NCBI RefSeq assembly: GCF_031769215.1
Contig: NW_026782463.1
Span: 992,001-1,056,000, forward strand
Source of the DNA: Ylistrum balloti
Taxonomy: Eukaryota
Length of the DNA: 64,000 bases
Direction: 5' to 3'
A program made the translations under genes and the position numbers. Under the pieces are notes generated by a model that did no database searches, was not told the DNA's origin, and saw only the letters and a program-made list of their open reading frames with translations. Below, one piece after another: positions 8,130-34,804 of the stretch. Every line of letters starts with the position of its first letter. The first letter of the stretch is position 1.

Positions 8130-11100
8130 TCAAGATTTGGCTATACTGCGCAGTAACTTCTCTATTTTCTGATCGTTTCTGATGATGTTGGACTTGACAG
8201 CAGCAATAAGATCCATTTGGTCAGCTATGGCCTGATCCACTTCTCCAAGCTGGGCCTTCATAGGTTCGATGGCTTTGTCTGTGATACTGCAAGTAAAGGA
8301 TACATGTAGTGTAACACGATCCAAATATTTCTTATATCAGTTGTAAGTCGCATGTGAAAGTTATTTTCAATCACTGAAAATATCATGTACAGTCAAACCT
8401 GTGTATACAGGCCACTCAAGGGGGCAGTGGCCTTTATACAACACAGATGGCCTTTATATAGATGTTCAATTACAATACTATGAATTGCATCATCAAAACA
8501 GCGACCTTTACAGACAGGTTTAACTGGACATACAGATTGTGTCACAAGTGGAATATTCATGGGGAAACCAGTGTAGTAATGTTGTACATTTTACCAGAAC
8601 AATGTAAAAATGAGAGTTTTTCTTCAACAAGGAGGACTTCAGCTGAATTCACATCCCACAAATGAAAGGATATCTACAGATATAAACAACACTTGTGGAC
8701 AGCAGGATATAGGGTCACATTCTGATTCCCGTTAAATACCTATAACTTATGAACCACAAGAACACAATTTGGTTAAAATGATTCCGTGCCTTACCATTGG
8801 TATAACAATGGCCTACTCTAACTAGTGTACTAATTACTTCCTTTTGTCAGCAGCTCCACCAGAGAAGATATCAACATAGCACATTATCTAAACTCACACA
8901 TAATATTCATCACGGACTTACCCCTTTTCCCGTTTTAATGCCAAAACATGATCCTTGTTTTCTGTTTTCCACCGCTCCAACTCTTTCTGCATAGAGTCTA
9001 AATCTTCCTGTACATAATCCATGATTTTTCCAAGAGGATTAGCACTACGTGTTAAAGTCTGAATGCTGCCACGTAATTTATCGATCTCCTTCTGGACCGT
9101 GTCTCGCTGTTTCCGTCTCTGTGCATCAGACATTGTTGGCCGTTCCTGCGGAAAGATTTTTTTATTTCAGTAACAATTGATCACAAAAATGACGAAAATG
9201 GTATTTGAAAAACTGAAATTCCTTAAAAGGGTCTGGCTCTGCATTATACACAATATAAATTTGATGTAATATTTTGGTGAAAGGTACTAGATGATGCACT
9301 CTGTTAGTACACCTGCTTCATAAGCTACCAAAGTGTAAATGATAGAAGTCAGAAAAACATCATCAATGAACATTTGATTGGTTTTGATATGAAACAATCT
9401 ATAAACAGTACATATTTATCCAGATGTGAAACATATCTTAAAATACCAATGCAGTATACTAGTACAATATCTGTTTTATAACTGACACAGTTGATATACC
9501 CTGCTGCTCTGATAAAAAGAGAGTAATAAACACCACTATAGTTTTGCTTGCCACATACCACTTCTGTTTTTCTAGTTGCTTGTTGCTGCTGCTGACTGCC
9601 ACTCTCCAATTCCTTTTTGGTCTCCAGAATCTTCTTAACCAGGCCTCCATGATCATCTTCATCACTGTCCTCTGGCCGAGAAATGGTCTACAAATTTTCA
9701 AAATGAAATCTGGTTTGAAAGTAAGTTAAGATACAATAGCTGAGACTTATGACTTATATACATGTCTGGGTTAAATCATAGTGATTATTTACCTACCTCA
9801 CTGAAGTGTTGCATTAGTCAGTATGATTAGCAGCTGCTCTCATATCAATCCTGAAGCGTTTTTTTTTTAACCTTTTTCTTTTCAAAAGTATAAATGCTTG
9901 CCACTTATGAGGATTTCAATGTTTTTAAAGATAGACTGATGACCTACCTGATCTGGTTCAGGAGGGGGTGGAGCAGATTCTTCCACTAAAAAGTTTTCAT
10001 CATCATCGGAATCTCCATCGTCTACTATCACATTGGCTGGTTTCCCACTCCCGAGTCTGAAGAAAGGAAATGTATTGAATTATGTGTGGTAGCAATATAA
10101 CAAACTGTGGTGAAGGACACAGCTCACTTAATGATAATACAGTTAAGATACATCCAATTTAATATGGTGAAAGTCTTCTGTATCTGAAAAACTGCTATAA
10201 GTCACCATTTTTAAATACTGCACACATCCTTACATTAATTGCTTATTCCTTAAAATTATCCATAGTCCAGGTGACAACAAAACATTCTCGACATCATTTA
10301 TCAACAATACCAAATAAGGCTATTTTATTGCTATGTAATGTTCATATTCAATACTGTAAGTGTTTAACAATTTTTTTTTGACTGATTTCCTGTTTGATCT
10401 ACGTCTGATGTATTTATATCAACAAGCCCCAGTGATCTACGTCTGATGTATTTATATCAACAAGCCCCATTGATCAATGTTTGATGTATTTATATCAACA
10501 AGCCCCAGTGATCAATGCCTGATGTATTTATATCAACAAGCCCCAGTGATCTATGTCTGATGTATTTATATCAACAAGCCCCAGTGATCTACGTCTGATG
10601 TATTTATATCAACAAGCCCCACTGATGAATGTCTGATGTATTTATATCAACAAGCCCCATTGATCTATGTCTGATGTATTTATATCAACAAGCCCCATTG
10701 ATCAATGTTTGATGTATTTATATCAACAAGCCCCAGTGATCTATGTCTGATGTATTTATATCAACAAGCGCCATTGATCAATGTTTGATGTATTTATATC
10801 AACAAGCCCCAGTGATCTATGTCTGATGTATTTATATCAACAAGCCCCACTGATGAATGTCTGATGTATTTATATCAACAAGCCCCATTGATCAATGTTT
10901 GATGTATTTATATCAACAAGCGCCATTGATCAATGTTTGATGTATTTATATCAACAAGCCCCATTGATCAATGTTTGATGTATTTATATCAACAAGCCCA
11001 ATTGATCAATGTCTGATGTATTTATATCAACAAGCGCCATTGATCTATGTCTGATGTATTTATATCAACAAGCGCCATTGATCAATGTTTGATGTATTTA

Positions 11101-14100
11101 TATCAACAAGCCCCAGTGATCAATGTCTGATGTATTTATATCAACAAGCGCCATGTTCGGCTGATTATCTATCACTTCCTGTTCGACCTATGATCAGTAA
11201 ACCCGTATATTTACCTCATGGCCGGCTCATTTTCTATGGTTTCCTGTTTCCTCCTTGGTGGTGCTGGGCGCGCACTGCTTGGTCTATTCATTTTTCTCCT
11301 GAGATTAAAGCAGTTTTATGTAATAAAATTCATAATTATAATTTTAAAATGAGTAATGAAATAAAACATTACATATGGACATAACAAAAAGTGTATAAAC
11401 TTCATAAAAAGAAGATTTTTGTAACGTTCAACAAAAAGTCAATGGGCAACAACTTTTGGTAAAAAAGATACGTGCCCCAAGCTTCAAAAGTATTGATTAG
11501 GATAGTCAGACACATTTCAAGCCACATCTGATTGGAATTTCCTAATAAAGACAGTCTAGTCATATTACAGGTACAAGTATTATGACTGTTTGTGTGGTAC
11601 TTACGTGGCAGAGACCTGGGGAGGGAGGTCATCCTCACCCACAGGATCAGACGGAGGTGGAGCCCTCTGTGGCGGGGCCTGTTGATGTTGTTCATCCTCT
11701 GTAAATGGATTACAAACATACACATAGGGAAGGTAAAAAAAAATCCCTAAATATTCCTTATATGGTAAGCTAATTGTACAATAAAGCACTGTCATTTAAA
11801 TTATTCGGAGGAATTTCTTACTTTAATAAGAGGTCTAACAGGTCTGTATCACTCACCTGTTACTTAATGGTACCTACTACAATTTGATATTAATCACCTT
11901 AGGAGTCAGGAAGGGTTACAATGATAAAACAATGTAATCAACTTTTAATTTCATATTAAATATTATTACCCTACAACTTCTAGATCCCTCTTAGAAGATC
12001 TTTGATAATTTGAGTCCAGTGGTGTTCAAAGTGATGGCTGGCCCAGAATCACTGATCTATAATATCGTCTTACCCCAGAAAGACACTGGTCAAACATCAA
12101 TATCCTACTGTTGTTCAGTTTTACAATTTTTGAACTTTTGAGTCCTTACTTTTTAAGTAACGTTTTCAGGCCCACTAAGCTACCAAGCATAATCCTAACA
12201 TTTTATATCTAAATGACACTATCAAGTTCATGTGATATGGTCATTATCAAATAAGCTCATACCTGTAAGCACTTTTCAACAGGTTTAATAATACATTGTT
12301 TATAGCTATATTTCAAAGTTATTTTACAGAAAGGTTTTTAATTGGAACTCTGTTGTCTTATCAAAGTGAGGACAATATCATGTATTATAGTCTTACCTAC
12401 ATTATCCTAAAGTATGAATCACACAGAGAACAGATGAAATGTTTTTAACAAAATGGTATGCTTATCTGAAGCCATGACAGAACAATAAATGTGAATCCCT
12501 GTGGTGTTTAACACATGATGTGATATCAACATGCTGTGAGAAAAAAAATTAGATGAAAATTGATGTCAAACAAACTTATAAAGCAATATAAAGATCAGTG
12601 TATATTTCATATCAAAAAAGTCATAGAGAGATGAATGTTTCATCGTATATATAATGCCAAACAAGGTCTTGTTAATGGTATTTATATCTCTGAATAATTC
12701 TGATACATTAGAAGTCACAAAAGGTTACAATGTATATATCTTAACATAAGGCAAACAAAAAAGGAACAGATATCGATGTGTCTATGTTTATACTACTGTT
12801 GATATAAATAATGATTGTTTGGATCATTTAATATCTTAAAACTTTCTAAACATATAGTTCCTAAAAAATGCTCCATGGTTTCATCATTTCAGTTGAGGAA
12901 AAAGAATACAAAAAGTCTATGTTCCAACACCGTTCCACAGATCCCAATGAAAACAATCCATATACCATCAGATTCTACAAGAAAGGATGTCCTTCAATAT
13001 GTTCTCATGTATTAAGTCCTTCTAAACCTTGGTGCTACTAAATAGTGTTCTTCAAAATCTACCATAGTCACTATTATTCAGAGTCTTTCTATACTTACTG
13101 CAATTCAAATGTCCTTTAAAACTGATCACACTAACTGCTGCAATTTCCATCAAAACTGTTCACACTTCTTTCTGCAGTTTCCTTCAAACCTGCCCACACT
13201 AATTACTGCAGTTTTCTTCAAACTTCATCACACTTACCACTGCAATTTCCTTCAAACCTGATCACACTTACTGCTGCAATTTCCTTCAAACCTGATCACA
13301 CTTACAGCTGCAATTTCCTTCATACCTGATCACAATTACAGCTGCAATTTCCTTCAAACCTGATCACACTTACAGCTGCAATTTGCTTCAAACCTGATCA
13401 CACTTACTATTGTAATTTCCTTAAAACCTGAAAACGCTTACTACTGCAATTTCCTTCGAAACTGATCACACACTACTAAAACACCCTTAAAAGCTGATAA
13501 CATCTGCTGTTACAATGTCCTTTAAAACTGAAGACACCTAAAGCTGCAATTTCTTTCAAATCTGATCATACTTAATACTGCAATGTCCTCAAAACTGGGT
13601 GAACATTTCAAACAATAGCTAAAAAGTTTTGAAAAAACAAAATGATTTACAAGAATATTTGATCATTTTTTCGGAGACCATCAACACCTTAATTGTTATA
13701 GTGATAATTTGAACGCCATGCTTGTTTAGTGTGGTTGTCAGATATTTAGTTAGAAATAAGAAACACAATTCATCATTATAAACAATAACAACGATTCTTT
13801 TCAAAATCAGAAAAATGCACCATACAACGTAAAAAAATCATGCAATGCTAATTTTTTCCAAGTCCTTCAGAAATCTCAAAATCAGTTGTTTTCCTACCCA
13901 GTCTTCCAGTGTCACAAATATTAATAATTAACTAATGAATTAGAATCTCATTAGGGAAACTTTAATTAACATTAATACGAATTAATTGATAGCCAGTTTC
14001 ATCCTAACGCTGCTCATTATGAACTGATAATTTTGTTATACAGAAGCAAAGATTGGAAAATCTTTTATATCTGAAACTATCTATTTAGCAGAGACTTTAC

Positions 14101-17100
14101 ACAAAGAAAAGAAGAAAGAATAAAAGTCGACAAAAAAAGACTCAGCGCAACTGGATTTATTAATCTTAAAAACTAAAAGTTGCACATTGTCAAGCTGAGG
14201 GTCTAGTAATGGCAGTCTCTCACCCTGGATTGGTAGTGTACAACACCTAGTTAGATAATTACATATTCACATGACATTGTTGTGGTTTGTCCAAAACAGC
14301 TTTTAAGTTTAGTCCATTTTTAGGTACTGTACTAAATATCCACAAACAACAACAACAAAAATAGTGTGCTACTGTATTCAGGGAAACTCAACACTATTTA
14401 AAATTCACTTTTTTGCCCTTTAACCAAGGGGGAAAATATGAAAAGTGCAAATGTTGATAGATGTTATAGATGAAAAGTTACATATATCAATATATCAATG
14501 TATTTTTCACTGCATTTAACACTGGATGAAAATGAAAATTTTAATTCAAAGTTAATAACAATCCAAAGTTTCCCCATATACAGATAAAAAAGCATTTTCA
14601 TTTTTCATGTACATTTTTTTTTTTTTTTTAAATTGAATCCGTGGATATTTTCTACTAGGTGACATGAGTGGTATACACTGGAGGGTGAGAGAATGGATAG
14701 CTATGAGATATATGGGAGGTCTAGGTAGGAGAAATTCCGTATACACCATCATGCCCATGCTATAAACTACACAACTACAAGTACTGCAGTCTCTCATGCT
14801 GATCTGGCTGTTCAAAACAAGGCTAACACATGATGTTCTTCATGATCTTTGTAAAATAATTACACTTATGGAATGCAACTTTATTTATTTCATAAAAATT
14901 TGTGCAATTTGATTCAAATATAGTGAATTTCTTGATTATGAACACAGAAATGGTGTACCTTTATGTAGAATTCAAACTAAAAACATCATTTGGCATGCTA
15001 ATGTTGATAAAGAAACACCACTTATTGTCAAAAGTTGTCGGAGTTAGTTCATTATGCAATGTTATCACTTCCAACACTAATTACGTTGGTAAGTTCTCAA
15101 AATTAACATAATGAGATTTACATATTCGTTTTTTTTAATTTGGTGTATCTTTACAACACAGGTTTTCAGTGTGAATTCAAAAGTGATGTAAATTCACTGC
15201 ACCAGGTTGTGAACTGTGAATGCAATTGATGCAGACATTCTGTACGCCTTGAACAACTCAGATCTTGTCACCCAAAACTGGAGAGGATTGTAACTTTTTA
15301 CATGTCAATCCAGCTGTATTTCTTTTCCTTATCATATTATCACAGTGAAAAAAGGCTTTTTATTCATAATTTCCAACTAGATCAAATATGTTTGAAGAAA
15401 TTCTCATCAGTAAAATATAACCAAAGCCAGGATTACATATCCATAGTACCTTTAACACCAGAAAATTTTTCAAACTTCAAACAACTTTGTGAAAATTCAA
15501 TATTAATTTACATATTTTGGTCATAAATATACTACACAGTGAATACCTAATGTATACTTCAAAACCGGAGTTGGTGTACTAGGAACAAATTCGTGTTCAT
15601 TACTCTGGATTGACATGGAAAAAGGGACCAACGCATTCCAGTAAAGGGTATTTCATAAGAATTCAACATTACGCCCTTCTGTTTGGTGAAAACCATACCT
15701 TCATCACTTGAATCACGATGCCGCCCTGCAAGGTTACCAATAGAATAACAAAATATACATGCAGCAAAGGAATCGTATATAAGCCACACTGAGAAAGGAT
15801 CCATTGGGTAAACAAGGGCAGTAACTCTAACAAAATTCTTTGACCTAGCAATTGATATAGTTCGGCAGTGTACCTAAATACCTGTACTGTTAAATATTAG
15901 GCTTTAACCTGTTATGGCTAACCCAAGTTCTCTAAAATTCTTCAAAACTTGTCCGTAGGCGAAGTTTATGTTATTTCCGAGGTGGAATGACACTGCTATG
16001 TTTAATTAACACTGCCTGTCTGCAATAACAATGTTCAAGCTGAGTTATTAGGGGAAGTCTATCCTTTAGCTTAAAAAAAATAACCCCTAAAATCATAGGA
16101 AAAAGAGAGAGGGATGAATATAAATAATTAGCTTTATAACAGATTGCTGAATCTTAAACCTTTTGCTTAATTCATTTACAGAGGAAAGTTTTTCAAAATG
16201 CACACACACACAAAAAGGAAGTAACCTGAATTTAGAGAAAAAAAACACTGACAGAGTTTTCAGGAAACAGATGTGGCACTGAATGCGGAATTAGTACTCT
16301 AGATCTAGTCATTTATTCGTGAAATTACATAAAAAGCGTGTCGATTTTGTCAATGATTACTTTCTAGGTTGCGAAATACATGTAAATGCTGCAACTTCAA
16401 GTAAGAAATTGATATGAATTTCAACACAATGTCCACATTCATGGAAGCTATGATGGAATGTCCTTCTTGCATCTAAGAAATTATTTGCGTTGTTAATAAC
16501 AATCAGTATTCATATGGTGTCCTGAAGCATTGTCTAAGATTTAAAACTCAGCTTCCTTTGTCTGATCATATTCGCACACAGCCTTAATAAAGCTGAAATC
16601 AACACTAAAAGCAGACATCCAATAGGCTGGTAATACTAATGTATTCAAAGCTACACAACCTGCTAGGAAGCCAAATGACAAACTTTAAATGTATCCCGAG
16701 TGGTTCTCAAGATTAAGGACTGTTGATGTCATGCTCTTGCACCAATTTTACTATAAATTCCAATGTTACTACCCAGACCACATGCTACAATAACAATCCC
16801 TCTTTTTTTTTCAGATATATCATGCTTGTGAAAATCTACGGTCATCATCATGATTTACAGGAAAACGTTCCTCCACATATCCTAACAAAAATCCTGGTTT
16901 CTTTCAATATTCTCTCCAGAAAGATTTGACTTTTTAAATAAATACATTGTATGTTAAGAGATAAGGGGTGATTTCAGTCAAAACTAAAGGGTGATCCTGT
17001 GAGGTATACTGAAGGAGTGGTGCAGTCCAAGTGAACTGTGTGGGGGCACTTGGGCGTCAACAGATCGTAGAAGCTAATGGGTGCACAGAAGATTTTTGCT

Positions 17101-20100
17101 GGTAAGATTTTCTTGAGAAACATTTATTAAAACTCAGTTCAGACCTTGATTAGTCTTGCAACTTATCAAGACTTGACCCAGAATCACCCAGGAGTTTAAT
17201 TACCAAATAATAATTTTCTCAAGACATCTGCGCCAGATTTGTAGTTTGATAGTTGTAATGATGATTGGTTAAGAATAGTACATACATGATTACATATGTC
17301 ATAATGCACTCACATCTATGTGAAACCATTCACCAATTAAATATATATTCTATTATAAGGCTTGATGATTAGAAATGATTTTAAAATGATTCACAGATAT
17401 ATTTAATCTTGATGACAATTATGATCAAATGAGATTTCATTATCTTGTGAAAACATATTTGTTTGTTTATTTCTAAATCAGCACATCTCTCCATACTCAC
17501 CCTCTCTGCGCCTCCTGGAACCCTTTGCTGATGAAGGACGAACTGGTCTCTGTACTTCAGACTGAAAATTTAAAAATCATGAATGAAATGAAAACCAAAC
17601 CGTGTGAATGTTTTAACAGCTGATCATCTCCTGCTACAGGTTATCCTTAAACCCAGATATCAACTCAACATAAAACTTACAACAGGGTTGAACAAATGTG
17701 TTAAAAGCTTAAAACTTCAAAAACACTTCATTGTTTCATGTTAAAAAACCTTGTTTAAGAAAAAAATAAGTCATAATCAAAATCCTTCATGAATGTTTAC
17801 TATGATATATATGAAAAACTTACAACAGAAAAAAAAATATGATTTTATGATAAAAATGGAATCTTTGACCATTTTCCCAGATGTTGAAGACTATTATTTA
17901 ACAGCTGAAGTGAAGGGGATTTTCACACATTAGATATCAAGCCATTTTTGCACAATGTTCACTTAACCGTGTCTGGGTCACTGGCTCAAGTATTGAGAAT
18001 GGTTTGATGTATAAACCTAATATTGCATCATTTACATACTGGCTGATCACAGTCTATTTTCAAACTTGTAAAAACATGATGTAAGTTACTGGTAAATTAT
18101 GGATACTTTGATAAATATTTAATCTTGCTTGAGTTGAGTTTCTTGGGATAAAGTAAAATATGCTATACTAACATGGTATCAGCCCAGATTGTACCATAAC
18201 ATAAAAGACCACTGTTGCAGATTGAGGTCACTAGGCACTTGACGTAAGTTTCTCGTCATGTAGTTGTCTAACGTTGTTGGAGTACCCAAGAATATTTCTA
18301 AACTCTATATTTGACATCTATGTATACCATAGCAAAACATCAACATTCATTAGGAAGAATACTTTTCCACTTTCGTTGTAATCTGCCAAGGTCAAATTCA
18401 TTACTTAACTCTACATTTCAAGTACCATAATTTCCCTATCAATAATTAATTGGATTTTAAGTTATAACTGGTGTCTGATCGATGTCCATTATACACAGTA
18501 TCTAATAGGACTGAGAAAAATCCTTTAAATCAGACATAAATCCATTAACAATTACTAGAATTCAGGCTGTATGTGATGTATATACCAGGTACAATGGATC
18601 AGGTGTTTCAACTTATGATGCACATTGTTTACTAGCCTATACACTACTAGACTAAAACACATGGATGAGATATCATTTCAAAGACATTTTTATAAAAGAT
18701 TATGGGCTGATAAAAATGCAACTAACCTCTCCATTCACCATGCCCTCATTTTCCTTGCCCTCATCATCATCTCTGTGCTGTAAGTAAAGAGTAGATTCTA
18801 TGAGTTACACAATAATACGAAAAAGTTATTCTGAGTCATATAATACTAACACCTAAAGTACGTCATGTTCAAAATTTTAAAATCTCAATTAGTACCTCTC
18901 AATCCATAAAATACTAAAACCTCAACTACCTGTCACTTGGCCCTATTTCAAACAAGTTTTTCTCATCTTTCACTAATACAAATTCAATCTATGATGAAGC
19001 AATGCTACAGATGATTAAATAAATGATACAATCAAAATGTAACATCCTACACTGTATAGGGTAGTAAAACCACACCTTTCATCCTGTAGCACTTCATACA
19101 AGTGGTTCTTATAAAATCAGTATAAGTTTGGAATTTAATCTATGGAAGTACAAATTCATTTTGATGTTATCTGTATGTGACATTTTCATATTTAATCCAT
19201 TAGATTAAATTTTTTCAACAACCATACTTTGAAAATTTTAGAGAAATTTTGAATTTCAATAATTCTAGGAAGTTTAAAAATGCTTGATAACCTTCTTATG
19301 CAATACGGGTATGGTTATATTAAACAATCAATTAACAAACACGAAAGTCCAGCATTAAATGTAACACCAAAAAATAACTTAATATATTACAGAGATTACA
19401 GACATGTGTATTACAGAAATCTTTGTAACACCTGACATGTGTATTACAGATCTATGGTAACCCTTTTCTGCTACTTCAAGACTTCTAAAATACAGTTATA
19501 TGAAAAGTTTCTTTTTTACAAATATGTTTTTCATAAACAGACATATGTATCTTGAAAAAGAAAGCTACTAGAAACAAGTATATACCTAACTTCAACCATT
19601 GTAAAATTTCTGGCAATACTAACAAAGACATATAGTGTTCGCAATGGCATTTTGAAACTGGGGGTAAAGTGAACCCGTGTTAATGCAGTTATATTGGAGA
19701 GTGATTGAAATCCTGGGGAAGAAGTCTTGAATTTCACCAATTTTTACTCTCATTCGGAAGTAACAGGTAACACTGACATAAATTAATAACTGTAAAAACA
19801 AAAAATCATAACACTTTGTTAAACAGAACATAAACTGGAAATTTATTACTTGACAGAAGAAAAGAACATTTCCAACAGTACAAACAACTCCACAGTACAG
19901 TTACTGCCTCCTAATGTTACTGTTGATCAAATGGTAGTTGTAATAACACCACAATCTGGAAGTCAAAACCAATTTTAATTCCAAGAGAGGTAATGAAATT
20001 TATCTTAAATATAAGTTAAAGAGAAGAATAAAGGAAGGTAATAATATCAATCCCAACCTTTACCCTGATCAATGATGGATTATTAGGGATGCAATCATGA

Positions 20101-23100
20101 GATCATACCCAACCTGACAGAATAGTAAAGGGAGGTAATTTGGTCAAGTCTACATATTAAGGGGAGGTAATCAATCCAAGTTCTCTGAAAGAATATCAAA
20201 GGGTGGTAATGAGGTCCAGATCAACAATTACCTTTATAGAATATCAACTTATCTATACATTAACAGGAGAAAAAGAAACATGTAACTCAAATTTGAGGAA
20301 ACATCCAACATCAACTTCAGTAAAAAGTAACCGTGAACTGTAACTCCAAAAGAACTGAACAGTAGACCTGAATGTGTTTTTTCTTGATGTCCTGTATTCT
20401 GTAGGGGTCAATCTGGTACACCTGTTCTTCATGACTAAGCTTGCTGTTGGATGAATCTTCCTGACCTGGTGCTGACCTAGCCGGAGTCACATTATCTCTG
20501 TGACGCTTTGATCTAGAGGGACTGTTCTTTCCAGATACAGGTTGTTTGGCTCCTCTGTTTTTCTGCAATCTTTTACTAAATTTTGATCGTGATTCTAGGA
20601 CAACAAAGTCTTTAGATGATGACTTTTTACCTGGAGAAGATTTAGATGATTTGCCAGATTCTTGTTTAGGGCTTACTTTACTACTACTGCCGTGTATAAC
20701 TTTCATGGCCTCTTCCTTTTGTCTCTCCCTGATAGCCATACGACTTTTTGTACCAGACTTTCTTTTCTTCCCACCTGTGTCTACAAATCTTTCTTGTGCT
20801 TTTCCAGCATTTAGCTTCCCAACTTCTGGGTACACGATGTCCTCTAGACTATGATCTATTTCTGGTTGCTCTCTGCCCTTCTTCCTCTTTACTCCCTCTC
20901 GGTAATTTGTATTCTTCATCCTACGTACCCCTTCTCGGTAATCTGCGTCCTGATTTCTTTGTACCTCCTCTCGGTAATCTGCATCCTGAATCCTTTGTAT
21001 CTCCTCTCCATAATCTGTGTCCTGAATCCCCTGCACTGTCTCATGGAGATCTACGCCCTGATTTCTCTTCTCTGGATAACCAGCGTCATGAGGCTTCTTC
21101 ACTGTCTCTCTATGCTCCATATCTTGGGACTTGTGCACCACCTCATTACTGTAGGAAACATCTGGGCGCCGATTGACTCGTGGTCGAGCTGCTCCAGGAC
21201 GATTTGTCCTGGGTGTTTTGGCTACTTCTTTTTCCTCGATTTTTGAGATAGCATTTACAGTCAAATTTTCAATGGTTTTTGCATTCTTATTCTTCAAATC
21301 GGAGGACTTAGGGTGATTCGGAAAATCACTATCGGATAGATTTGCAAGAAGATCCATATCTGAGTCTGTATTGCCGTCTGACTGGTCATCGGCACACAGA
21401 AACTCAGCCAGAGTGTCAGGGTCGGGGATGTCAATGACCTACACAGCATATAATAATGGAATGATGACGTGATTGGTCATGTTTAGCCATTCTAAGGCAA
21501 TATAGGAATTCAGAGGGGATATTATATGTAAAATTAAAAGAAAATGGGAACATTAAGGGGTCAATACTATATTGGAAGGACCTAAGCCCCCTTGACCCCC
21601 TAAAGAATTATCCCTGATCCTTCAGTAGATAAAATAACTGTTGTAGCAAACTAGAACAAGAAACACCAACTAAAATTCTTCATATTCCTTTGTAATTATG
21701 GACACAAAGAAAAATGATTATTATATCAGATAAATGTTCTATCACTATCATTTTCTATCATAAACTAATGCCCATATAAACATTGACAGGAACAGCTAAA
21801 TCAGTTAGTATAATAATCCCTGTTCTATCATATTAACAATTCCGATCGTTTCTAGATTTTAGCAGATCTACAACTACAGAAGTATGTCATGTGGACCAAG
21901 AGCTGTATTGAAATGTTCATGAATAATACAGAGACAGAAATATCCATAAGCTGTTGATAAATAATACCTATAAATTTCTCACAGTAGTCCTTTTCTATAT
22001 CGATTTTTTTCATATAAAACTACATAGACTAAAGTTGTAAAATTCTATCCAATGAGTTGACCTGTAAATCTCACCTTTTTCCTCCTCTCTCGATCCTTAT
22101 GTCTGTCTTCCCTATCTTTGTGTCTATCCTCCCTGTCTTTATGCCGATCATCTCTCTCTCTGTCCTTGTGTCGGTCCTCTCTATCTCTATGCCGTTCATC
22201 TCTATCTCGAGACCTGTCTTTTCTGTCATCTTTATCCCTTCCCCTTTCTTCCTTTTCACGACCTCTATCTCGATCCCTGCTCTTTTCTCTATCACGTTTC
22301 TCCTAGTCATCAATTTGAATATCTATGTAATTGCCATTCAGTGATTTGTTTCTGTAGTTACTACATTTAAGATTTTAATAGGACTTTACACTCAGAAGTA
22401 TTTTACCTTTACATCTATGACCTTCTCTTAGGCACTATTGTTCACAACAAAACTATAAAGAAAATCAGTTAAGGTCTATATCTTATGAAAGATAAATGAA
22501 AACATACAGAGTAAGACAACAAACAGTTCTCCAACACAACTTGGTGAATTCTTTACTTCCAGCATTAAGTGGATCTTTTTAATACAATGTAATTTATTTT
22601 ATGAAGACCTGTCAAAATAAGATATTATTTTGACTGTTTTTCTAGCCTTATACATGATTTACCACTATGTTTTACTGAACTTCAATACACATTATTGTAC
22701 CTCTGGTTCCTTTCTACGTTTTTCTTCTTTGTCCTTTGACCTCTCCTTCGCTGGTTCCTCTTTTGATCCTTTACTTAAAAACCTGCTAACTTGAGCATCA
22801 TAGTCACCCTGGAAACATCACAAACATTGTGATTATCATTTCAATCATATGACCAGCAATAAAAAAATTTCACAATAAAATCAAATATGTCTACATTGCA
22901 GCCATCTTGTTTGAATATAATGAAATGACTTCACAATATCCAAGGACATGTGAGTGAAAATAAGACTGGAACACTGACAGAGGGATGAACAGAATAATAG
23001 ACTGAAATACTGACAGAGGGATGAACAGAACGATAGACTGGATTACTGACAGAGGGATAAACAGAATGATAGAGTGCATTACTGACAGAGGGATGAACAG

Positions 23101-26100
23101 AATGATAGAGTGCATTACTGACAGAGGGATGAACAGAATGATAGACTGGATTACTGACAGAGGGATGAACAGAACGTTAGACTGGATTACTGACAGAGGG
23201 ATGAACAGAACGTTAGACTGGATTACCGACAGAGGGATGAACAGAATGATAGACTGGAGTACTGACAGAGGGATGAACAGAATGATAGACTGGATTACTG
23301 ACAGAGGGATGAACAGAATGGTAGAGTGGATTACTGACAGAGGGATGAACAGAACGCTAGACTGGATTACTGACAGAGGGATGAACAGAATGATAGTGGA
23401 TTACTGACAGAGGGATGAACAGAATGATAGACTGGATTACTGACAGAGGGATGAACAGAACAATACACTGGATTACTGACAGAGGGATGAACAGAATGAT
23501 AGACTGGATTACTGACAGAGGGATGAACAGAATGGTAGAGTGGATTACTGACAGAGGGATGAACAGAACGCTAGACTGGATTACTGACAGAGGGATGAAC
23601 AGAATGATAGACTGGATTACTGACAGAGGGATAAACAGAATGATAGAGTGCATTACTGACAGAGGGATGAACAGAATGATAGAGTGCATTACTGACAGAG
23701 GGATGAACAGAATGATAGACTGGATTACTGACAGAGGGATGAACAGAACGTTAGACTGGATTACCGACAGAGGGATGAACAGAATGATAGACTGGAGTAC
23801 TGACAGAGGGATGAACAGAATGATAGACTGGATTACTGACAGAGGGATGAACAGAATGGTAGAGTGGATTACTGACAGAGGGATGAACAGAACGCTAGAC
23901 TGGATTACTGACAGAGGGATGAACAGAATGATAGACTGGATTACTGACAGAGGGATGAACAGAATGGTAGAGTGGATTACTGACAGAGGGATGAACAGAA
24001 CGCTAGACTGGATTACTGACAGAGGGATGAACAGAATAATAGACTGGATTACAAACCTCTTGCATGACACACCAGTTGGTACTGAAAGTATCCTACGTTA
24101 TGGTATATTAATTTTGAGTTCCCACACTTGATCATATGGGAAATTAGTATAAATAAAAGACAATAAAGGGAGTTTTTGTCTAGCTTGAGATATAGATTAA
24201 GGTGTAAAACTTACCTTCATATTGACAGCTGCTGCCAAGCTCTGTAGAAGCTCATTTGTCTTTTCTGGTTCATGTCCAGCCACAATTTTACTTGGTTTAG
24301 CAGAGACAGATTTGCCAGTTACAGAAGCTTAAAAATTCATATAGAAAATTCTAAAAATAACATCAGCTATATTTTTGATGCAAAAATAGGTATATTCACC
24401 AGTAGAAGTATATAGTTTTTATCCCCTTCTAAACGTTATAAGACTTTTTTTAAACATGAGTATGCTGTGTTAGACTACCTGATATACTTGGATCTGCGAA
24501 ATTAAATTCAGCTGTATTAGTTGATAGAGCTTGTTAGTTCTGCAGAAAATCATTTCATTCTTAAAATTGTCGAATCAGTGATTAACATCTTCATGTACAG
24601 GATACTTTAAAATGCCAAGATTTTCTCTTCTGGAACTAACTGTAGTCAAATTTTGCTCGCTGTTACTATTTTACTGTAATGACGACAAAAGAAATATAAC
24701 AGACAATCTACCCCATTCAATCAGATATTTTACTTACATGTGAAATCAATTACTTTCTGCAGAAATGCCATCTTGCTATCTTTATCCTGCAAAGAGAATT
24801 AAACAGTTTAGAAATTTCACATCTTTCAATATTACTGGTTTCTATTTTTCTTTACAATTCCTTCATATCTTATTCTCAATATACCTTAATTATTTGACAA
24901 ATGGAGACATTACCCTTAAATCAAATAGTTTCATATCAATGACATTTATCACAATTACGAACTCTTTTGAACTGAAGATAATTTTAGAGGGGCAACTCTG
25001 TAAACATATCAAGCATAGAAGCAAATATCAAACTAGTGTTTGTTGCCAATCAACTAGAGTAATATTGTTTTCTCCTGTGTCAAATTTTAGCGGGAAAAGT
25101 TTCTGTAAATAAACAGTTAAACCAATGGTCTCTAATTAATGAAATGCTAAGGAAAGCAAAGAGGTGACAAATATTCAATCAAGTTTAGTCAGGAATATGT
25201 TGTTCCGTGTGTTTCCTGTGTGACTCACTCAAATTTTGAGAGCCTACTTTATTTCTTTGTAACTGGGTTCATTAAAATTTTGGAAATTGTGCTCTGGACT
25301 CACAAAAAAAAAAAGAAAAAACACAAATCTTACTAAGATTACTGAACGTTGAACAACATGTCATGCAATGGCCACTGGTCAATACCAAAACTTTATACCA
25401 ATATATATGATATTAATTGTATACTAAACATTCTGCCAACTAAAAAATCTTACCTTAACATTTTCTGAATTCATTTCAGTCTCGGTGAACAAACCCTTCA
25501 TGAATCCTGTTGTTTTTATTAACTGAAATAAATAAAACATTTGTATTTGTATTGCATACTCCACAAAAGTATGTGATGAAAAATTGAAGTTTTGTTCTGA
25601 TATCAATTATCCTTCACATCAAGCTTGTGTTAAATGTATGGTACAATATATCAGGTTTCAATTCATGATACATATACTCTGATGAAGCTTCATACATTTG
25701 TCTGTCAAGTAAAACAATTGATATAGAATTGGTTGTCACAGATCAAGACATATCTACCAGGTATACTTCACTAACACATTTAATATGACAGAGCTTTAAC
25801 AGTTGAGAGAAAAACGTTTTTGCATTTTAAGAATATATATAATAGCTCTTTGTTTTCTATGCAATGGATATATTGCAACTATTAAGTGATTTTTGGGACC
25901 ACGATATTGTGAGTCCTGGACTTATGATTTTCCTGTAGGACTTTAAAATTTTGAGGTTCCTCCATATCTCTTAGTATTAAGTGACAACTCACTGAATTTT
26001 TGGAAAATCATTTTCTTGCCTAGTCTGAAAAAATCCTACAGAAATTACCATAGCCTATACATTAAAACTGTAAATGAACCACATAAAACATCTTGGTTCA

Positions 26101-26880
26101 TGTACCAGAGAACAACAGGAGTAGAGAGTACAGATCTCAAGTATTTGAACCAGTCGGTGGGTAGACTGTCTGCATTGCTCTTGAGAGTTTCCTTGGAAAT
26201 TCGAGAACTTGGGTTGTGGTTGCCTTGAGGAATGAAAACCTGACGGAGTACTGTAGAAGGTTGCGAGTGCAGGTCATAGTACTTGTCTTGGCTAGGGTTA
26301 ATTTCCCTTTAGACAAATGGTAAAGTCTGGTTAGAGAGCAAAATTTCACTAATACAGCAGAGGCATTACTGTATACGTTCCATTACTCATTTCTTTTACA
26401 AAATAATGCTCCAATTCCCTGGTGCAAGTTTTCTGTTTTTACTTTGAACATATACTTTCTATACCACGTATACTGTCCGATTAAACTTCAATAAATTATA
26501 ATGTATGTGGACCATTCTCAATAAATCATACCGTATGTGTATCATACTTCTGATATTAGCTGTCTTGTGGACACCTGTTGATTTTCAATTGGATGCAACA
26601 AATAATCTCAATCTATCGAAATGTCAAATCCACTGTACTGCTAATAGCTACTGCTAAAGTGATTCGTTCTAAAACATGTCCACTGCTGCACAGGCTTACG
26701 TACCACTAGCAAGGATGCAAGGTTTTATAAGAGTTTTCAGCGAGTTTCATCACTTACCGATGTCATAACATCATGAAGAAATCTAAATGGTGGTTTGGAT
26801 AACAATTTTTCTGTCAGTGGTGGTTTCTTGATGATTTTGCCCAGTGTGTCCTGAGTTTTCTTCATAACTTTCGCATCCAT
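8130..26880 (-). CDS. TRAF3IP1: TRAF3-interacting protein 1 / intraflagellar transport protein 54 (MIP-T3), complete
   Basis: Phase-consistent exons: 26880-26758 ([41 protein letters not shown]), 25522-25454, 24786-24738, 24327-24215 ([19 protein letters not shown]), 22808-22701, 22302-22075 (R/D/E/K-rich), 18777-18727, 17561-17501, 11698-11605, 11298-11215 ([10 protein letters not shown]), 10056-9948, 9687-9559 ([14 protein letters not shown]), 9145-8922 and 8286-8130 (C-terminal coiled coil, stop TGA). Motifs match the IFT54 CH domain and coiled coil. Confidence 0.95.
8390..8526. mobile_element. Tc1/mariner (pogo/Tigger-like) MITE in the last TRAF3IP1 intron
   Basis: Left TA|CAGTCAAACCTGTGTATACAGGCCAC; reverse complement of the right end CAGTTAAACCTGTCTGTAAAGGTCGC. 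The right flank is GA rather than TA, so the TSD is imperfect. Confidence 0.65.
10396..11153. repeat. 38-bp minisatellite, about 20 copies
   Basis: Unit GATCTACGTCTGATGTATTTATATCAACAAGCCCCAGT with variants, in a TRAF3IP1 intron. Confidence 0.95.
13125..13600. repeat. 34-bp degenerate minisatellite
   Basis: Unit ATCACACTTACTGCTGCAATTTCCTTCAAACCTG; best conserved at 13240-13420 and decaying outward. Confidence 0.85.
20317..21438 (-). CDS. Large in-frame optional exon or alternative terminal exon of TRAF3IP1 (about 357-373 aa, low complexity, 12-aa repeats)
   Basis: Acceptor tgctgtgtag|GTC at 21438, phase 0 like the flanking exons. 27 open codons lead into the 346-aa ORF 21357-20317. There is a weak donor CAG|gtctac at 20368, or a stop at 20317 with a minus-strand AATAAA at 19842-19847. 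Confidence 0.6.
   Translation of the reverse strand, partial: VIDIPDPDTLAEFLCADDQSDGNTDSDMDLLANLSDSDFPNHPKSSDLKNKNAKTIENLTVNAISKIEEKEVAKTPRTNRPGAARPRVNRRPDVSYSNEVVHKSQDMEHRETVKKPHDAGYPEKRNQGVDLHETVQGIQDTDYGEEIQRIQDADYREEVQRNQDADYREGVRRMKNTNYREGVKRKKGREQPEIDHSLEDIVYPEVGKLNAGKAQERFVDTGGKKRKSGTKSRMAIRERQKEEAMKVIHGSSSKVSPKQESGKSSKSSPGKKSSSKDFVVLESRSKFSKRLQKNRGAKQPVSGKNSPSRSKRHRDNVTPARSAPGQEDSSNSKLSHEEQVYQIDPYRIQDIKKKHIQVYCSVLLELQFTVTFY
22964..24051. repeat. 36-bp minisatellite, about 30 copies
   Basis: Unit GACTGGATTACTGACAGAGGGATGAACAGAATGATA. It explains the [12 protein letters not shown] and [12 protein letters not shown] ORFs. Confidence 0.97.
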
Positions 26881-32900: not shown

Positions 32901-34804
32901 GTATGCTTCAGTATTTGTAAAGAAAGTTTTCTTAAGATAACACAAAAGAAACAAGTGAATAGAACTTTTTAGTTCAAATTTAGAGTTAGATAAAATGGAG
33001 TCAAACATTATACAGCTGTTTCGTCCTTCTAAACCCGTTTGTAATGCTAAGGGCCTAAATTTTGAAACCTAGGATGCGACTGATGGAATCTAAAGTAATC
33101 AACTAACGGATGGAGACTTTCCTGAAGTTTAGGAGAGAAATAAAACGGGTCAAAAGCTTTATGGGAGTCTGTTAAATCCACAATCCATTAATTCAACTTC
33201 TAGTGCTGAACTGCCTTTTCTTGATATAAATGCTTCGAAATAACGGGATTAGAAAGCTTATTGACAGCAATCGAACACGCATGACAATGTCTTAAGTATT
33301 GATAAAGTCAAATATCAGTTCATTTGAATATGTAACTTTTCTTGTGTGTTTTTTCTTCTAGTTCAACTTCAGTCATCGCTGCTTAACATAGGACTTGGCT
33401 TTGGTTTCATTCCCGGCAAATTCTATGACCATTTTGGACCCCAATGGGCGTCGCTAGGGGGCGTAATTGTATCGGTGCTTGCCTACACTCTACTATGGAG
33501 TACCACCAAATACGTGTCTTTCTACCAGAACAAGAGCTGGTTGATGGCAATCTATTTCTTCTTGTCAGGTATGTCGACTGGAGTCTATGTCTAACAGCAA
33601 TGCAATTATCACATATTAAGTTAAAGGTAATCATTGATTAAATCAATCTACAAGCTGAAGTAGATAAAAAAAACAGATTTGTATCTAGGCGTTTAAACTA
33701 CAGTCTTATTTATAATAACATATACCTTAAGTAATGAAACATTGGGAAATAACACTTGTTTTAATATTGTTGATCGGTAACTTTTCAGGTCTTGGATCTG
33801 TTTTCACCTACATGGTAGCTCTCAACACAAATGTCATAAATTTTGACGAAAAACACAGAGGCAAAATAGTGGGATTACTCAATGCGTTTTTCGCTGGAAG
33901 TCCGTCCGTATTCGCGGCTATTTATTACCATGTGATAGGAGATCCAGCAAGCACCGAAAGTTTTACAACTATGATGTTGATGTTTGCCATCTCGTTTGGT
34001 ATTACAGATATCATATGTATGATATTTCTGAGAATTTACACAAAACCGAATGAACTTATGGAACAACGTGAACTGCAAACTAATATTTCTATGGAAGAAA
34101 GTTCAAGCACTTGCTGCGATGAGGTAACAAAAACCAGAAAAATTGAAGGCACTCCGCTCCGCGATCTTTTACGAAATGTCGATTTTTATATCTTCACTTT
34201 GATGTTTACTTTCGCTTCCACCGTTGGACTAGTGTATGTTATAGCTTTAACACAAACGACTGACGCCATGAACTTTTCCTCACACGACCCCGACGTGGTG
34301 CTCATCGTTCCCATAACGAATGCCTTAATCAGTGTGTGCATTGGGACATTTTCTGACTACTTCAGAGATAGGTTACCGCGGTTGACCATTTTGATAGCGG
34401 GATGTATATCGTTCGTCGTGTGTCAGGTACTTGTAGTGTCGTTGGCAGATGGCTACACGTGGATCGTGATTGCGACCATATTCTGCGGTATAGGAGTTGG
34501 ATTAGTCTGGTCCATCTCTCCGACCATTATGAGCGAGTTCTTCGATGTTGCCGACCTTGGGCGAAACTGGGGTATTGCTCTGTTCCTTGGGTCATTAATG
34601 GGTCTAGGAGCACAAGAAAGTTTTGGCGCTTTTTATGACGCCGCTAAGAAAAACCCTAGTGATATATACTGTAACGGTATAGAGTGTGTTCGTCGAGGGC
34701 ACGCAGTAGCATTAGCATCTGGTATCGTAGCTGTCATTCTTGGCACTGTTCTTTTGTGGAAGCGACGGAATTCCAATCAACATAGATTTGAGAGTTTTGA
34801 TTAA
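29958..34804 (+). CDS. Major facilitator superfamily transporter, nodulin-like / MCH1 / NFD4 type (about 462 aa)
   Basis: Exons 29958-30123, 33362-33568 and 33789-34804 with GT-AG ends and phases 1,1. The N-terminus WVGLAVGCLAKFVTGSLFVFNVYENAIKTTFNYTETEVQLQSSLLNIGLGFGFIPGKFYDHFGP fits the Nodulin-like domain. HRGKIVGLLNAFFAGSPSVF and GTFSDYFRDRLPR motifs and about 12 hydrophobic segments are present. Confidence 0.88.
30230..32335. repeat. 44-bp G-rich minisatellite, about 43 copies, with higher-order structure
   Basis: Unit GGTGAGTTATACACTCTAACTAGAGAAGGGTGAGGTAGGGGTAT in MFS intron 1. Confidence 0.97.
30288..30463. mobile_element. 176-bp MITE with CAG(A/T)GGCGTAGCAA TIRs and a 5-bp TSD (hAT5-like)
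   Basis: Left end CAGAGGCGTAGCAAC, right end TTGCTACGCCACTG. GTGAG is duplicated at 30283-30287 and 30464-30468. Confidence 0.85.
32640..32850 (-). mobile_element. Penelope-like element RT fragment
   Basis: GINMGT..KPFSFTFRYIDEIL resembles the PLE RT motifs GIPMGT..FRYIDD. Confidence 0.65.

What the first reader, a model, noticed from the sequence alone, without database searches (positions are those of the whole stretch)
20317..21438. Giant in-frame, skippable exon inside IFT54 that could create a non-canonical isoform
About 1.1 kb is open in the same strand and phase between two phase-0 exons that also join cleanly without it (..RERRKK|HRDDDE..). It encodes an acidic start, tandem repeats and a long Ser/Lys/Arg-rich basic tract that I do not recognise from vertebrate or algal IFT54. 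If spliced at 20368 it inserts 357 aa into the disordered linker. If terminal (stop 20317, AATAAA 19842-19847) it keeps the tubulin-binding CH domain but loses the C-terminal coiled coil that binds IFT20. That would give a microtubule-binding protein uncoupled from IFT-B, plausibly sperm- or gill-cilia-specific; this last part is inference.
Basis: partly seen in the sequence, partly recalled or inferred. Interest (0 to 1): 0.75.

Follow-up and report, generated by a model that had tools for sequence, protein, structure and literature searches.

The report
Giant optional exon in scallop IFT54
The 1.07-kb open frame is a real, conserved, in-frame exon of the cilium-transport gene IFT54 that scallops can include or skip; sister-species annotations already show both forms, so it is a sound but largely known feature.

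Summary
Window 21438-20368 (minus strand) is a 1071-base, phase-0/phase-0 exon with AG and GT borders. It lies inside an IFT54/TRAF3IP1 gene that runs from about 26880 to 8133.

It is coding, not chance:
- It is single-copy in the genome.
- Two other bivalve genomic contigs have it with the same borders, while their introns do not align.
- dN/dS is 0.14, against 0.03 for the rest of the gene.

RefSeq models of Pecten maximus, Mizuhopecten yessoensis and Argopecten irradians carry the exon internally (820-833 aa). They also have isoforms without it (534-542 aa). A spliced RNA-seq contig from A. irradians holds an uninterrupted 824-aa frame that includes it.

The window matches Ylistrum balloti isoform X2 (532 aa), which has exactly the skip junction RERRKK|HRDDDE.

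Long and short isoforms with an insert at the same site occur across molluscs. Many inserts share two motifs, RPxAARPR and KRKxGTKSR.

The encoded segment is predicted disordered. It adds a third RPxxA(R/K) motif to the IFT54 linker.

The cassette reading is supported. The terminal-exon reading has no support: the read-through tail is not conserved and the AATAAA count is at chance. Tissue specificity was not tested, and no RNA data for this species could be laid.

The parts
22075..22302 (-). Upstream constitutive exon of IFT54. It is Arg/Asp/Glu/Lys-rich, ends ..DRERRKK in phase 0, and has the donor AAG|gtgaga.
   Evidence: tblastn of P0002 and P0013; blastn of the mRNA contig L011; sequence
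21439..21440 (-). AG of the 3' splice site of the giant exon, preceded by a pyrimidine-rich tract.
   Evidence: Sequence. The same border is seen in L009 and L010. The L011 mRNA alignment breaks here.
20368..21438 (-). Giant cassette exon: 1071 bases, 357 codons, phase 0 at both ends.
   Evidence: Open frame. Orthologous exon in RefSeq scallop isoforms. dN/dS 0.14. Single copy in the genome.
21325..21432 (-). Module 1 (residues 3-38): acidic [36 protein letters not shown], with two predicted short helices.
   Evidence: Near-invariant in 5 scallop-type sequences and recognisable in L010 and Mytilus; helices at residues 7-15 and 24-38
21130..21219 (-). Module 2 (residues 74-103): [26 protein letters not shown]. 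This is a third RPxxA(R/K) motif besides the two canonical IFT54 linker motifs.
   Evidence: Invariant columns in alignment A1. Found in the inserts of 8 of 17 mollusc lineages, and no shuffle reached that count. Weak similarity to the canonical motif. Canonical motifs mapped.
20895..21029 (-). In-frame tandem repeat: 36-base period, 3.8 copies, 12-aa units [12 protein letters not shown]. The segment is expanded in this species and absent in L009. It is predicted as one long helix.
   Evidence: Tandem Repeats Finder; alignment gaps; helix at residues 141-185
20689..20772 (-). Module 3 (residues 223-250): basic [26 protein letters not shown], with a predicted helix.
   Evidence: Invariant columns. 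GTKSR-type motif in 7 of 17 lineages, and no shuffle reached that count. Helix at residues 233-248.
20368..20424 (-). Module 4 (residues 339-357): [19 protein letters not shown], the conserved end of the exon.
   Evidence: Alignment A1
20366..20367 (-). GT of the 5' splice site. The context CAG|gtc has a non-consensus C at +3, and this is conserved in three species.
   Evidence: Window CAG|gtctac; L009 CAG|gtctaa; L010 CAG|gtcata
20317..20365 (-). Read-through tail up to the TGA stop. It is not conserved and is most likely intron.
   Evidence: 17 codons here against 1 codon in L009; no nucleotide alignment beyond the donor
18727..18777 (-). Downstream constitutive exon, [17 protein letters not shown], phase 0.
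   Evidence: tblastn at 100% identity; L011 alignment
11214..11297 (-). Exon carrying the canonical IFT54 linker motif [28 protein letters not shown].
17502..17561 (-). Exon carrying the other canonical motif, [20 protein letters not shown].

Best explanation
Window 21438-20368 (minus strand) is a real protein-coding cassette exon of the intraflagellar-transport gene IFT54 (TRAF3IP1) of a scallop. The window matches Ylistrum balloti. Including the exon gives a protein of about 889 aa, and skipping it gives the 532-aa form. [quoted passage not shown]

The exon lengthens the unstructured linker between those two domains by 357 residues. It adds four conserved short modules:
- an acidic helical start;
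- an [14 protein letters not shown] motif, which is a third copy of the RPxxA(R/K) motif found twice in every metazoan IFT54 linker;
- a basic [11 protein letters not shown] helix;
- a conserved C-terminal end.

Inferred, not shown: inclusion tunes how the linker engages IFT motors or other partners, or how far the CH domain can reach, in particular cell types. The conserved weak donor (CAG|GTC) and the exon's great length are consistent with regulated inclusion.
For: Gene identity and collinear 16-exon model.

Exon borders are conserved in two independent genomic contigs whose introns do not align: L009 and L010.

Purifying selection:
- Against L009, pN is 0.22 and pS 0.78; differences by codon position are 59/55/141, and shifted frames give ratios above 1.
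- Against the A. irradians mRNA, omega is 0.14 for the exon and 0.03 for the rest of the CDS.

Single copy in the 648-Mb genome.

RefSeq isoforms with the exon: P. maximus 829/820 aa, M. yessoensis 829/820 aa, A. irradians 833/824 aa. Without it: 534, 542 and 540 aa, and Y. balloti 532 aa.

The spliced RNA-seq contig L011 has an uninterrupted 824-aa frame, and its alignment to the window breaks at 22073/21440 and 20376/18780. It ends in an Illumina adapter.

Same-site long and short isoform pairs occur in Mytilus, Saccostrea, Dreissena, Gigantopelta, Littorina and Liolophura. Shared motifs are found in 7-8 of 17 lineages, a count no shuffle reached in 2000.

Disorder with four helices: mean pLDDT 49.9, pTM 0.18.

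The two canonical RPSSA(K/R) motifs are present from cnidarians to vertebrates.

Literature on the linker: it is unstructured, it contacts dynein-2 in Chlamydomonas, and it is needed for retrograde trafficking in human cells (PMC10110421, PMC10320715).
Against: No RNA evidence from this species. The only run that holds the exon looks like genomic DNA contigs, and nothing was laid on the exon.

No Y. balloti protein containing the exon was returned by any search. Inclusion in this species is therefore inferred from orthologues.

The short isoforms in scallops are known to me only as RefSeq models. I could not see the reads behind them.

The similarity of module 2 to the canonical motif is weak: 11 of 29 identities, E = 0.011 in a single pairwise comparison.

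The motif patterns were defined after looking at the data.

Any role in motor binding is inference only.
Confidence: 0.8

Rival explanations
1. The exon is constitutive in scallops. On this view the short isoform models are minor or artefactual predictions, so there is no meaningful isoform switch.
For: The first-numbered RefSeq isoforms (X1, X2) of three scallops include the exon. The only scallop transcript contig I found includes it.
Against: Four scallop species have exon-free RefSeq isoforms, including the one that matches this window. In other molluscs the short form is the one commonly assembled from RNA: several Logan clusters of 516-554 aa, one with 56 members. The weak donor is conserved. 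The exon's omega is about four times higher than that of the constitutive exons, which is common for alternative exons.
Confidence: 0.1
2. The exon also serves as an alternative last exon. The transcript would read through the donor to the TGA at 20317 and be polyadenylated near 19842. The product would be a CH-domain protein that cannot join IFT-B.
For: The frame stays open for 17 codons past the donor, and one AATAAA lies about 470 bases downstream.
Against: The tail is not conserved: L009 stops one codon after the donor. Nucleotide similarity ends at the donor. One AATAAA is seen where 1.5 are expected by composition. No protein ending there was found in an exhaustive search. The donor GT is conserved in three species.
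Confidence: 0.05
3. The frame belongs to a separate gene nested in an IFT54 intron, starting at the ATG at 21357, and is not part of IFT54 mRNA.
For: Gene callers working on genomic contigs start the frame at this ATG (P0001; the ORF listing entry 20317-21357).
Against: The 27 codons upstream of that ATG, back to the acceptor AG, are the best conserved part of the exon. The mRNA contig L011 joins the exon in frame to IFT54 exons on both sides.
Confidence: 0.02
4. The frame is open by chance, or is a transposon-derived or decaying pseudo-exon.
For: No Pfam family matches. The sequence is low-complexity and contains tandem repeats.
Against: It is single copy. It is conserved with omega 0.14 across lineages whose synonymous sites are saturated. 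Its borders and phase are conserved in three genomes. It is present in a spliced mRNA.
Confidence: 0.01

Closest known systems
RefSeq 'TRAF3-interacting protein 1-like' isoforms X1/X2 of Pecten maximus (XP_033728155.1, XP_033728163.1), Mizuhopecten yessoensis (XP_021367229.1, XP_021367230.1) and Argopecten irradians (XP_069119601.1, XP_069119602.1)
   Same: The exon is orthologous. It lies between the same flanking exons (..RRKK | exon | [11 protein letters not shown]..), is phase 0 at both ends, and has the same four conserved modules. It is 69-73% identical in protein sequence.
   Different: The copy in the window is 62-73 residues longer, mainly through extra 12-aa tandem repeats between modules 2 and 3. 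No exon-containing protein of this species was returned by the searches.
Exon-free isoforms of the same genes: P. maximus X3 (534 aa), A. irradians X4 (540 aa), M. yessoensis X3 (542 aa), Ylistrum balloti X2 (532 aa)
   Same: P0013 is 100% identical to the window's exon cores.
   Different: They lack the 284-357 aa insert.
Long and short IFT54 isoform pairs in other molluscs (Mytilus 771 vs 559 aa, Saccostrea 863 vs 549, Dreissena 980 vs 545, Gigantopelta 711 vs 527, Littorina 956 vs 530, Liolophura 723 vs 558)
   Same: The insert sits at the same point of the linker. The RPxAARPR and KRKxGTKSR motifs are shared with bivalves, Lottia and Gigantopelta, in the same order.
   Different: The sequences are otherwise unalignable. 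Caenogastropod, heterobranch and chiton inserts show neither motif, so their homology rests on position alone. Whether each insert is a single exon is known only for the window, L009 and L010.
Canonical IFT54 linker motifs RPSSAKG(Q/S)RRR and [11 protein letters not shown](V/R)K(R/K)Q
   Same: Module 2 shares the RPxxA(R/K) core followed by basic residues. The second canonical motif lies 228-237 residues from the C-terminus in the animals checked. That position fits the human residues 393-407 of the 625-aa isoform, which PMC10110421 equates with the Chlamydomonas segment whose deletion weakened binding to the dynein light intermediate chain.
   Different: The similarity is short and statistically weak. 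No binding data exist for module 2. The equivalence to the Chlamydomonas segment is inferred from position, and the original paper (Zhu et al. 2021) was not readable here.

Membership tests
IFT54 / TRAF3IP1 gene | N-terminal MIP-T3 calponin-homology domain (PF10243) | tested here: met
   Three exon matches at window 26743-26865, 25442-25528 and 24227-24334; the best has E = 2.6e-11 and is over the cut-off.
IFT54 / TRAF3IP1 gene | C-terminal MIP-T3_C coiled coil (PF17749) | tested here: met
   Exon matches at 9568-9663, 8924-9136 and 8142-8288; the best has E = 4.2e-21.
IFT54 / TRAF3IP1 gene | Collinear with annotated orthologues over the whole length | tested here: met
   tblastn of P0002 and P0013 gives 16 ordered exon blocks on the minus strand.
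Cassette (skippable) coding exon | AG...GT borders, length a multiple of three, and flanking exons that join in frame | tested here: met
   1071 bases, phase 0 at both ends. The same holds in L009 (762 bases) and L010 (966 bases).
Cassette (skippable) coding exon | Mature transcripts that include it | tested here: met
   Met in a relative only: L011 is a spliced 4038-base RNA-seq contig of A. irradians with an 824-aa frame. It could not be tested for the window's own species.
Cassette (skippable) coding exon | Mature transcripts that skip it | tested here: inconclusive
   RefSeq models without the exon exist for four scallops, including the one identical to the window. I could not inspect the reads behind them. 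In other molluscs, short forms come from transcript-sized Logan contigs.
Cassette (skippable) coding exon | Purifying selection in the reading frame | tested here: met
   omega 0.14; third-position differences 125 against 52 and 43; shifted-frame controls give ratios above 1.
Alternative terminal exon | Conserved extension past the donor, with a poly(A) signal above chance or transcripts that end there | tested here: not met
   The tail is not conserved. AATAAA is seen once against 1.5 expected. Transcript 3' ends cannot be tested with these tools.
Transposon or repeat-derived ORF | Multiple genomic copies or transposon protein domains | tested here: not met
   One DNA match and one protein match in the whole genome; no Pfam family.

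The most novel reading that the evidence does not exclude
The giant exon is an ancient, mollusc-wide regulated cassette. It would equip IFT54 with a third motor-binding-type RPxxAR motif and extra acidic and basic modules. The long isoform would then change how dynein-2 or kinesin-2 is loaded, or how far the CH domain can reach, in particular cilia such as the dense motile cilia of gills, larval ciliary bands or sperm flagella. That would be an isoform-level specialisation of a core IFT-B subunit.
Probability: 0.15. Interest if true: 0.6.

Novelty: new member of a known kind. Interest (0 to 1): 0.35.

Why it matters
IFT54 is a core subunit of the machine that builds cilia. Its disordered linker is the part reported to contact the IFT motors.

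A 280-450-residue optional insert at one fixed point of that linker has been kept for a very long time in molluscs, despite fast sequence change, and it carries a few invariant short motifs. That marks out candidate interaction motifs that could be tested directly. It would also be an example of isoform-level tuning of a core transport complex.

For annotation, the exon should be added to this species' gene model: the only matching protein I recovered is the exon-free form.

The feature is not new to databases, because sister-species RefSeq records already show both isoforms. I found no paper that describes it.

Tried and rejected
- Read laying. The single run that holds the exon (X1, kind unknown) has 2.29 million contigs totalling 556 Mb, close to the genome size, so I take it for genomic DNA. 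Only short repeat pieces were laid and nothing fell on the exon.
- Pfam on the exon. Only sub-threshold noise appeared (LED_rpt E = 0.12, Vault E = 2.9).
- Exhaustive protein search. The hit P0004 is a spurious match of an unrelated repeat to the tandem-repeat segment.
- Scallop-exon HMM against other mollusc IFT54 proteins. It recovered only L010 and Mytilus. Wider homology therefore rests on position and on short motifs, and those motif patterns were chosen after seeing the data.
- In-frame alternative donor at 20422 (CAG|GTGTAC). Orthologous proteins run on through QVYQVDPYR.., so the annotated donor corresponds to 20368.
- Finding the longest annotated product for Y. balloti or A. irradians with the look-up of encoding contigs. 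Neither was on record.
- Zhu et al. 2021 (EMBO J 40:e105781) was not held. Its findings are cited only through PMC10110421 and PMC10320715.
- Searching papers for the run and sample accessions found nothing.
- No complex prediction was run, because no spliced partner sequence from this genome can be referenced.
Full report
**1. Observation**

On the minus strand the frame is open from 21438 to the TGA at 20319-20317 (373 codons). This is the longest open frame in the window.
- An AG lies at 21440-21439, preceded by a pyrimidine-rich tract.
- A GT lies at 20367-20366, after CAG. Together these delimit a 1071-base exon of 357 codons, phase 0 at both ends.
- The upstream exon ends at 22075 (..DRERRKK|gtgaga).
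- The downstream exon is 18777-18727 ([17 protein letters not shown]). The two join in frame without the big exon.
- The segment starts acidic (net charge -10 over residues 1-51). It contains a 36-base tandem repeat of 3.8 copies at 20895-21029. It ends basic (net +8 and +11 in residues 205-306).

**2. The gene**

Pfam MIP-T3 (PF10243) matches exons at window 26743-26865, 25442-25528 and 24227-24334. MIP-T3_C (PF17749) matches at 9568-9663, 8924-9136 and 8142-8288.

tblastn with scallop IFT54 proteins gives 16 ordered exon blocks from 26880 to 8133 on the minus strand.

P0013 is the RefSeq record 'TRAF3-interacting protein 1-like isoform X2 [Ylistrum balloti]' (532 aa). It is 100% identical to the window over the exon cores. 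The window is therefore that species or something indistinguishable from it.

**3. The exon is coding and belongs to IFT54**

(a) It is single-copy in the 648-Mb genome, by both DNA and protein search. It has no Pfam or transposon domain.

(b) L009 is a genomic Logan contig from another bivalve. It has the same arrangement: an RD-rich exon ending RRKK|gt, an intron, then tgtag|GTT..., a 762-base open frame, and CAG|gtctaa. Nucleotide similarity between L009 and the window is confined to the two exons, and the introns do not align.

(c) Against L009, pN is 0.22 and pS 0.78 (saturated). Differences by codon position are 59/55/141, and the two shifted frames give ratios above 1. Against the A. 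irradians mRNA, omega is 0.14 for this exon and 0.03 for 412 codons of the other exons. The exon is under purifying selection, but four to five times less tightly than the rest of the gene.

(d) L010 is a metagenome scaffold carrying host DNA of a more distant bivalve. It has IFT54 CH-domain exons, the RD-rich exon and a 966-base homologue of the exon, with borders cag|GTG... and ...CAG|gtcata.

(e) The exhaustive protein search found the exon inside P0002 (Pecten maximus TRAF3IP1-like X2, 820 aa) at residues 221-515, between ..DRDRRKK and [11 protein letters not shown]... A word search with that region added Mizuhopecten yessoensis and Argopecten irradians. In each species both X1 and X2 contain the exon. 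X1 and X2 differ only by a 9-aa micro-exon elsewhere.

(f) The A. irradians X2 protein is also encoded without interruption on L011, a 4038-base Logan contig that ends in an Illumina adapter. This is an assembled spliced mRNA. Its alignment to the window breaks at 22073/21440 and at 20376/18780.

**4. The exon is skippable**

A search with the conserved C-terminal part of IFT54 listed exon-free RefSeq isoforms for the same scallops:
- P. maximus X3, 534 aa (829 minus 295);
- A. irradians X4, 540 aa;
- M. yessoensis X3, 542 aa;
- Y. balloti X2, 532 aa.

All have the direct join RRKK|HRDDDE.

The 5' splice site is CAG|GTC in the window, L009 and L010. C at +3 is non-consensus (my own knowledge of metazoan donor consensus). 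A conserved weak donor on a 1-kb exon fits regulated inclusion.

I could not see the reads behind the short scallop models, so 'alternative' rests on annotation for scallops. In other molluscs, short forms come from many transcript-sized Logan contigs.

**5. Distribution**

Long and short isoform pairs with extra sequence at exactly this point of the linker occur widely:

| Genus | Long (aa) | Short (aa) |
|---|---|---|
| Mytilus | 771 | 559 |
| Saccostrea | 863 | 549 |
| Dreissena | 980 | 545 |
| Gigantopelta | 711 | 527 |
| Littorina | 956 | 530 |
| Liolophura (chiton) | 723 | 558 |

Long forms alone were seen in Solemya, Sinanodonta, Mercenaria, Ruditapes, Lottia, Nucella and others.

The inserts are mostly unalignable, but they share ordered motifs:
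- RPxAARPR-type: scallops, L010, Mytilus, Saccostrea, Dreissena, venerids, Sinanodonta and Lottia.
- KRKxGTKSR-type: scallops, L010, Mytilus, Saccostrea, Solemya, Lottia and Gigantopelta.

These are 8 and 7 of 17 lineages. The shuffle means are 0.08-0.25, and none of 2000 shuffles reached the observed count. The patterns were defined after seeing the data.

Non-mollusc IFT54 proteins in the list are 506-729 aa. None matched the exon in the exhaustive search. The cassette therefore looks old within molluscs and absent elsewhere. For caenogastropods, heterobranchs and the chiton, homology rests on position alone.

**6. What it encodes**

AlphaFold2 on a 6-sequence alignment gives mean pLDDT 49.9 and pTM 0.18, so no fold is predicted. 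Helices are predicted at residues 7-15, 24-38, 141-185 (the tandem repeats) and 233-248.

The conserved modules are:
- residues 3-38, acidic;
- residues 74-103, [26 protein letters not shown];
- residues 223-250, [26 protein letters not shown];
- residues 339-357, the conserved end.

The stretch between modules 2 and 3 is variable. It is absent in L009 and is expanded here by in-frame 12-aa repeats.

All metazoan IFT54 proteins checked carry two linker motifs, RPSSAKG(Q/S)RRR and [11 protein letters not shown](V/R)K(R/K)Q. Module 2 is a third motif of this type, though the pairwise similarity is weak (E = 0.011).

**7. Mechanism (inference)**

Published work describes the IFT54 linker as unstructured. 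It reports that a linker segment of Chlamydomonas IFT54 (residues 261-275, equated with human 393-407 of the 625-aa isoform) contributes to binding the dynein-2 light intermediate chain. It also reports that the linker is needed for efficient retrograde trafficking in human cells (PMC10110421, PMC10320715).

The second canonical motif lies 228-237 residues from the C-terminus in the animals checked. That fits human residue 393 of 625. The equivalence is my inference, and the original paper was not readable here.

On this basis, inclusion most plausibly adds a further partner-binding motif and about 350 residues of tether between the CH domain and the IFT-B2-anchored coiled coil. None of this has been tested.

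**8. Terminal-exon reading**

Reading through the donor adds 17 non-conserved codons here and 1 codon in L009. Similarity stops at the donor. One AATAAA is seen where 1.5 are expected. No protein ending there was found. I rate this reading at about 5%, and only as an additional minor isoform.

**9. Expression in this species**

This is open. The only run that holds the exon appears to be genomic, and the single read-laying run placed nothing on the exon. No exon-containing Y. balloti protein was returned by any search. The exon may be missing from that species' annotation.

**10. Verdict**

The finding is a real, conserved cassette exon of IFT54. The feature is already visible in RefSeq isoforms of sister species. 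I found no paper that describes it. Interest is moderate to low.

Noticed in passing
window 22963-24052: A 36-base minisatellite of 30 copies at 92% identity lies in the IFT54 intron upstream of the RD-rich exons. It is open in several frames on both strands and produces artefactual ORFs of 128-246 aa.
   Followed up: partly
window 15699-15726 (minus strand): A 27-base micro-exon encoding GRHRDSSDE has ag/gt borders. It corresponds to the 9-aa difference between isoforms X1 and X2 in the other scallops, and it is absent from the Y. balloti X2 protein.
   Followed up: partly
window 53392-54291 and 57866-58237 (minus strand): These are two exons of a hedgehog gene: the Hint module (PF01079, E = 5.7e-65) and the HH_signal domain (PF01085, E = 6.9e-48). 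The Hint-exon ORF begins with a poly-Leu/Pro/Ser/Ile low-complexity stretch that is probably intron.
   Followed up: partly
window 33734-34804 (plus strand): A 356-aa single-exon open frame matches MFS_1 (E = 7.1e-20) and NFD4_C. It is a major-facilitator membrane transporter fragment or gene lying between IFT54 and hedgehog.
   Followed up: partly
window, about 40130-40270: A run of N shows up as X in the ORF 39923-40378. It is an assembly gap or a masked stretch and was left untouched.
   Followed up: no
L010 2160-2340: The homologous exon in the metagenome-borne bivalve scaffold carries its own in-frame tandem repeat (ENEKGSTYKTKEK, 4 copies). It sits between modules 1 and 2, a different place from the repeat in the window. 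Repeat expansion in the variable parts of this exon therefore seems to recur.
   Followed up: no
inserts of heteroconch and palaeoheterodont bivalves and Solemya (P0037, P0051, P0053, P0035, P0018): A further conserved motif, (D)RRKRSSF / KRRKSSF / HRTSSF, lies at the C-terminal end of the insert. It is absent from scallops and looks like a basophilic kinase site; that reading is my own and was not tested.
   Followed up: no
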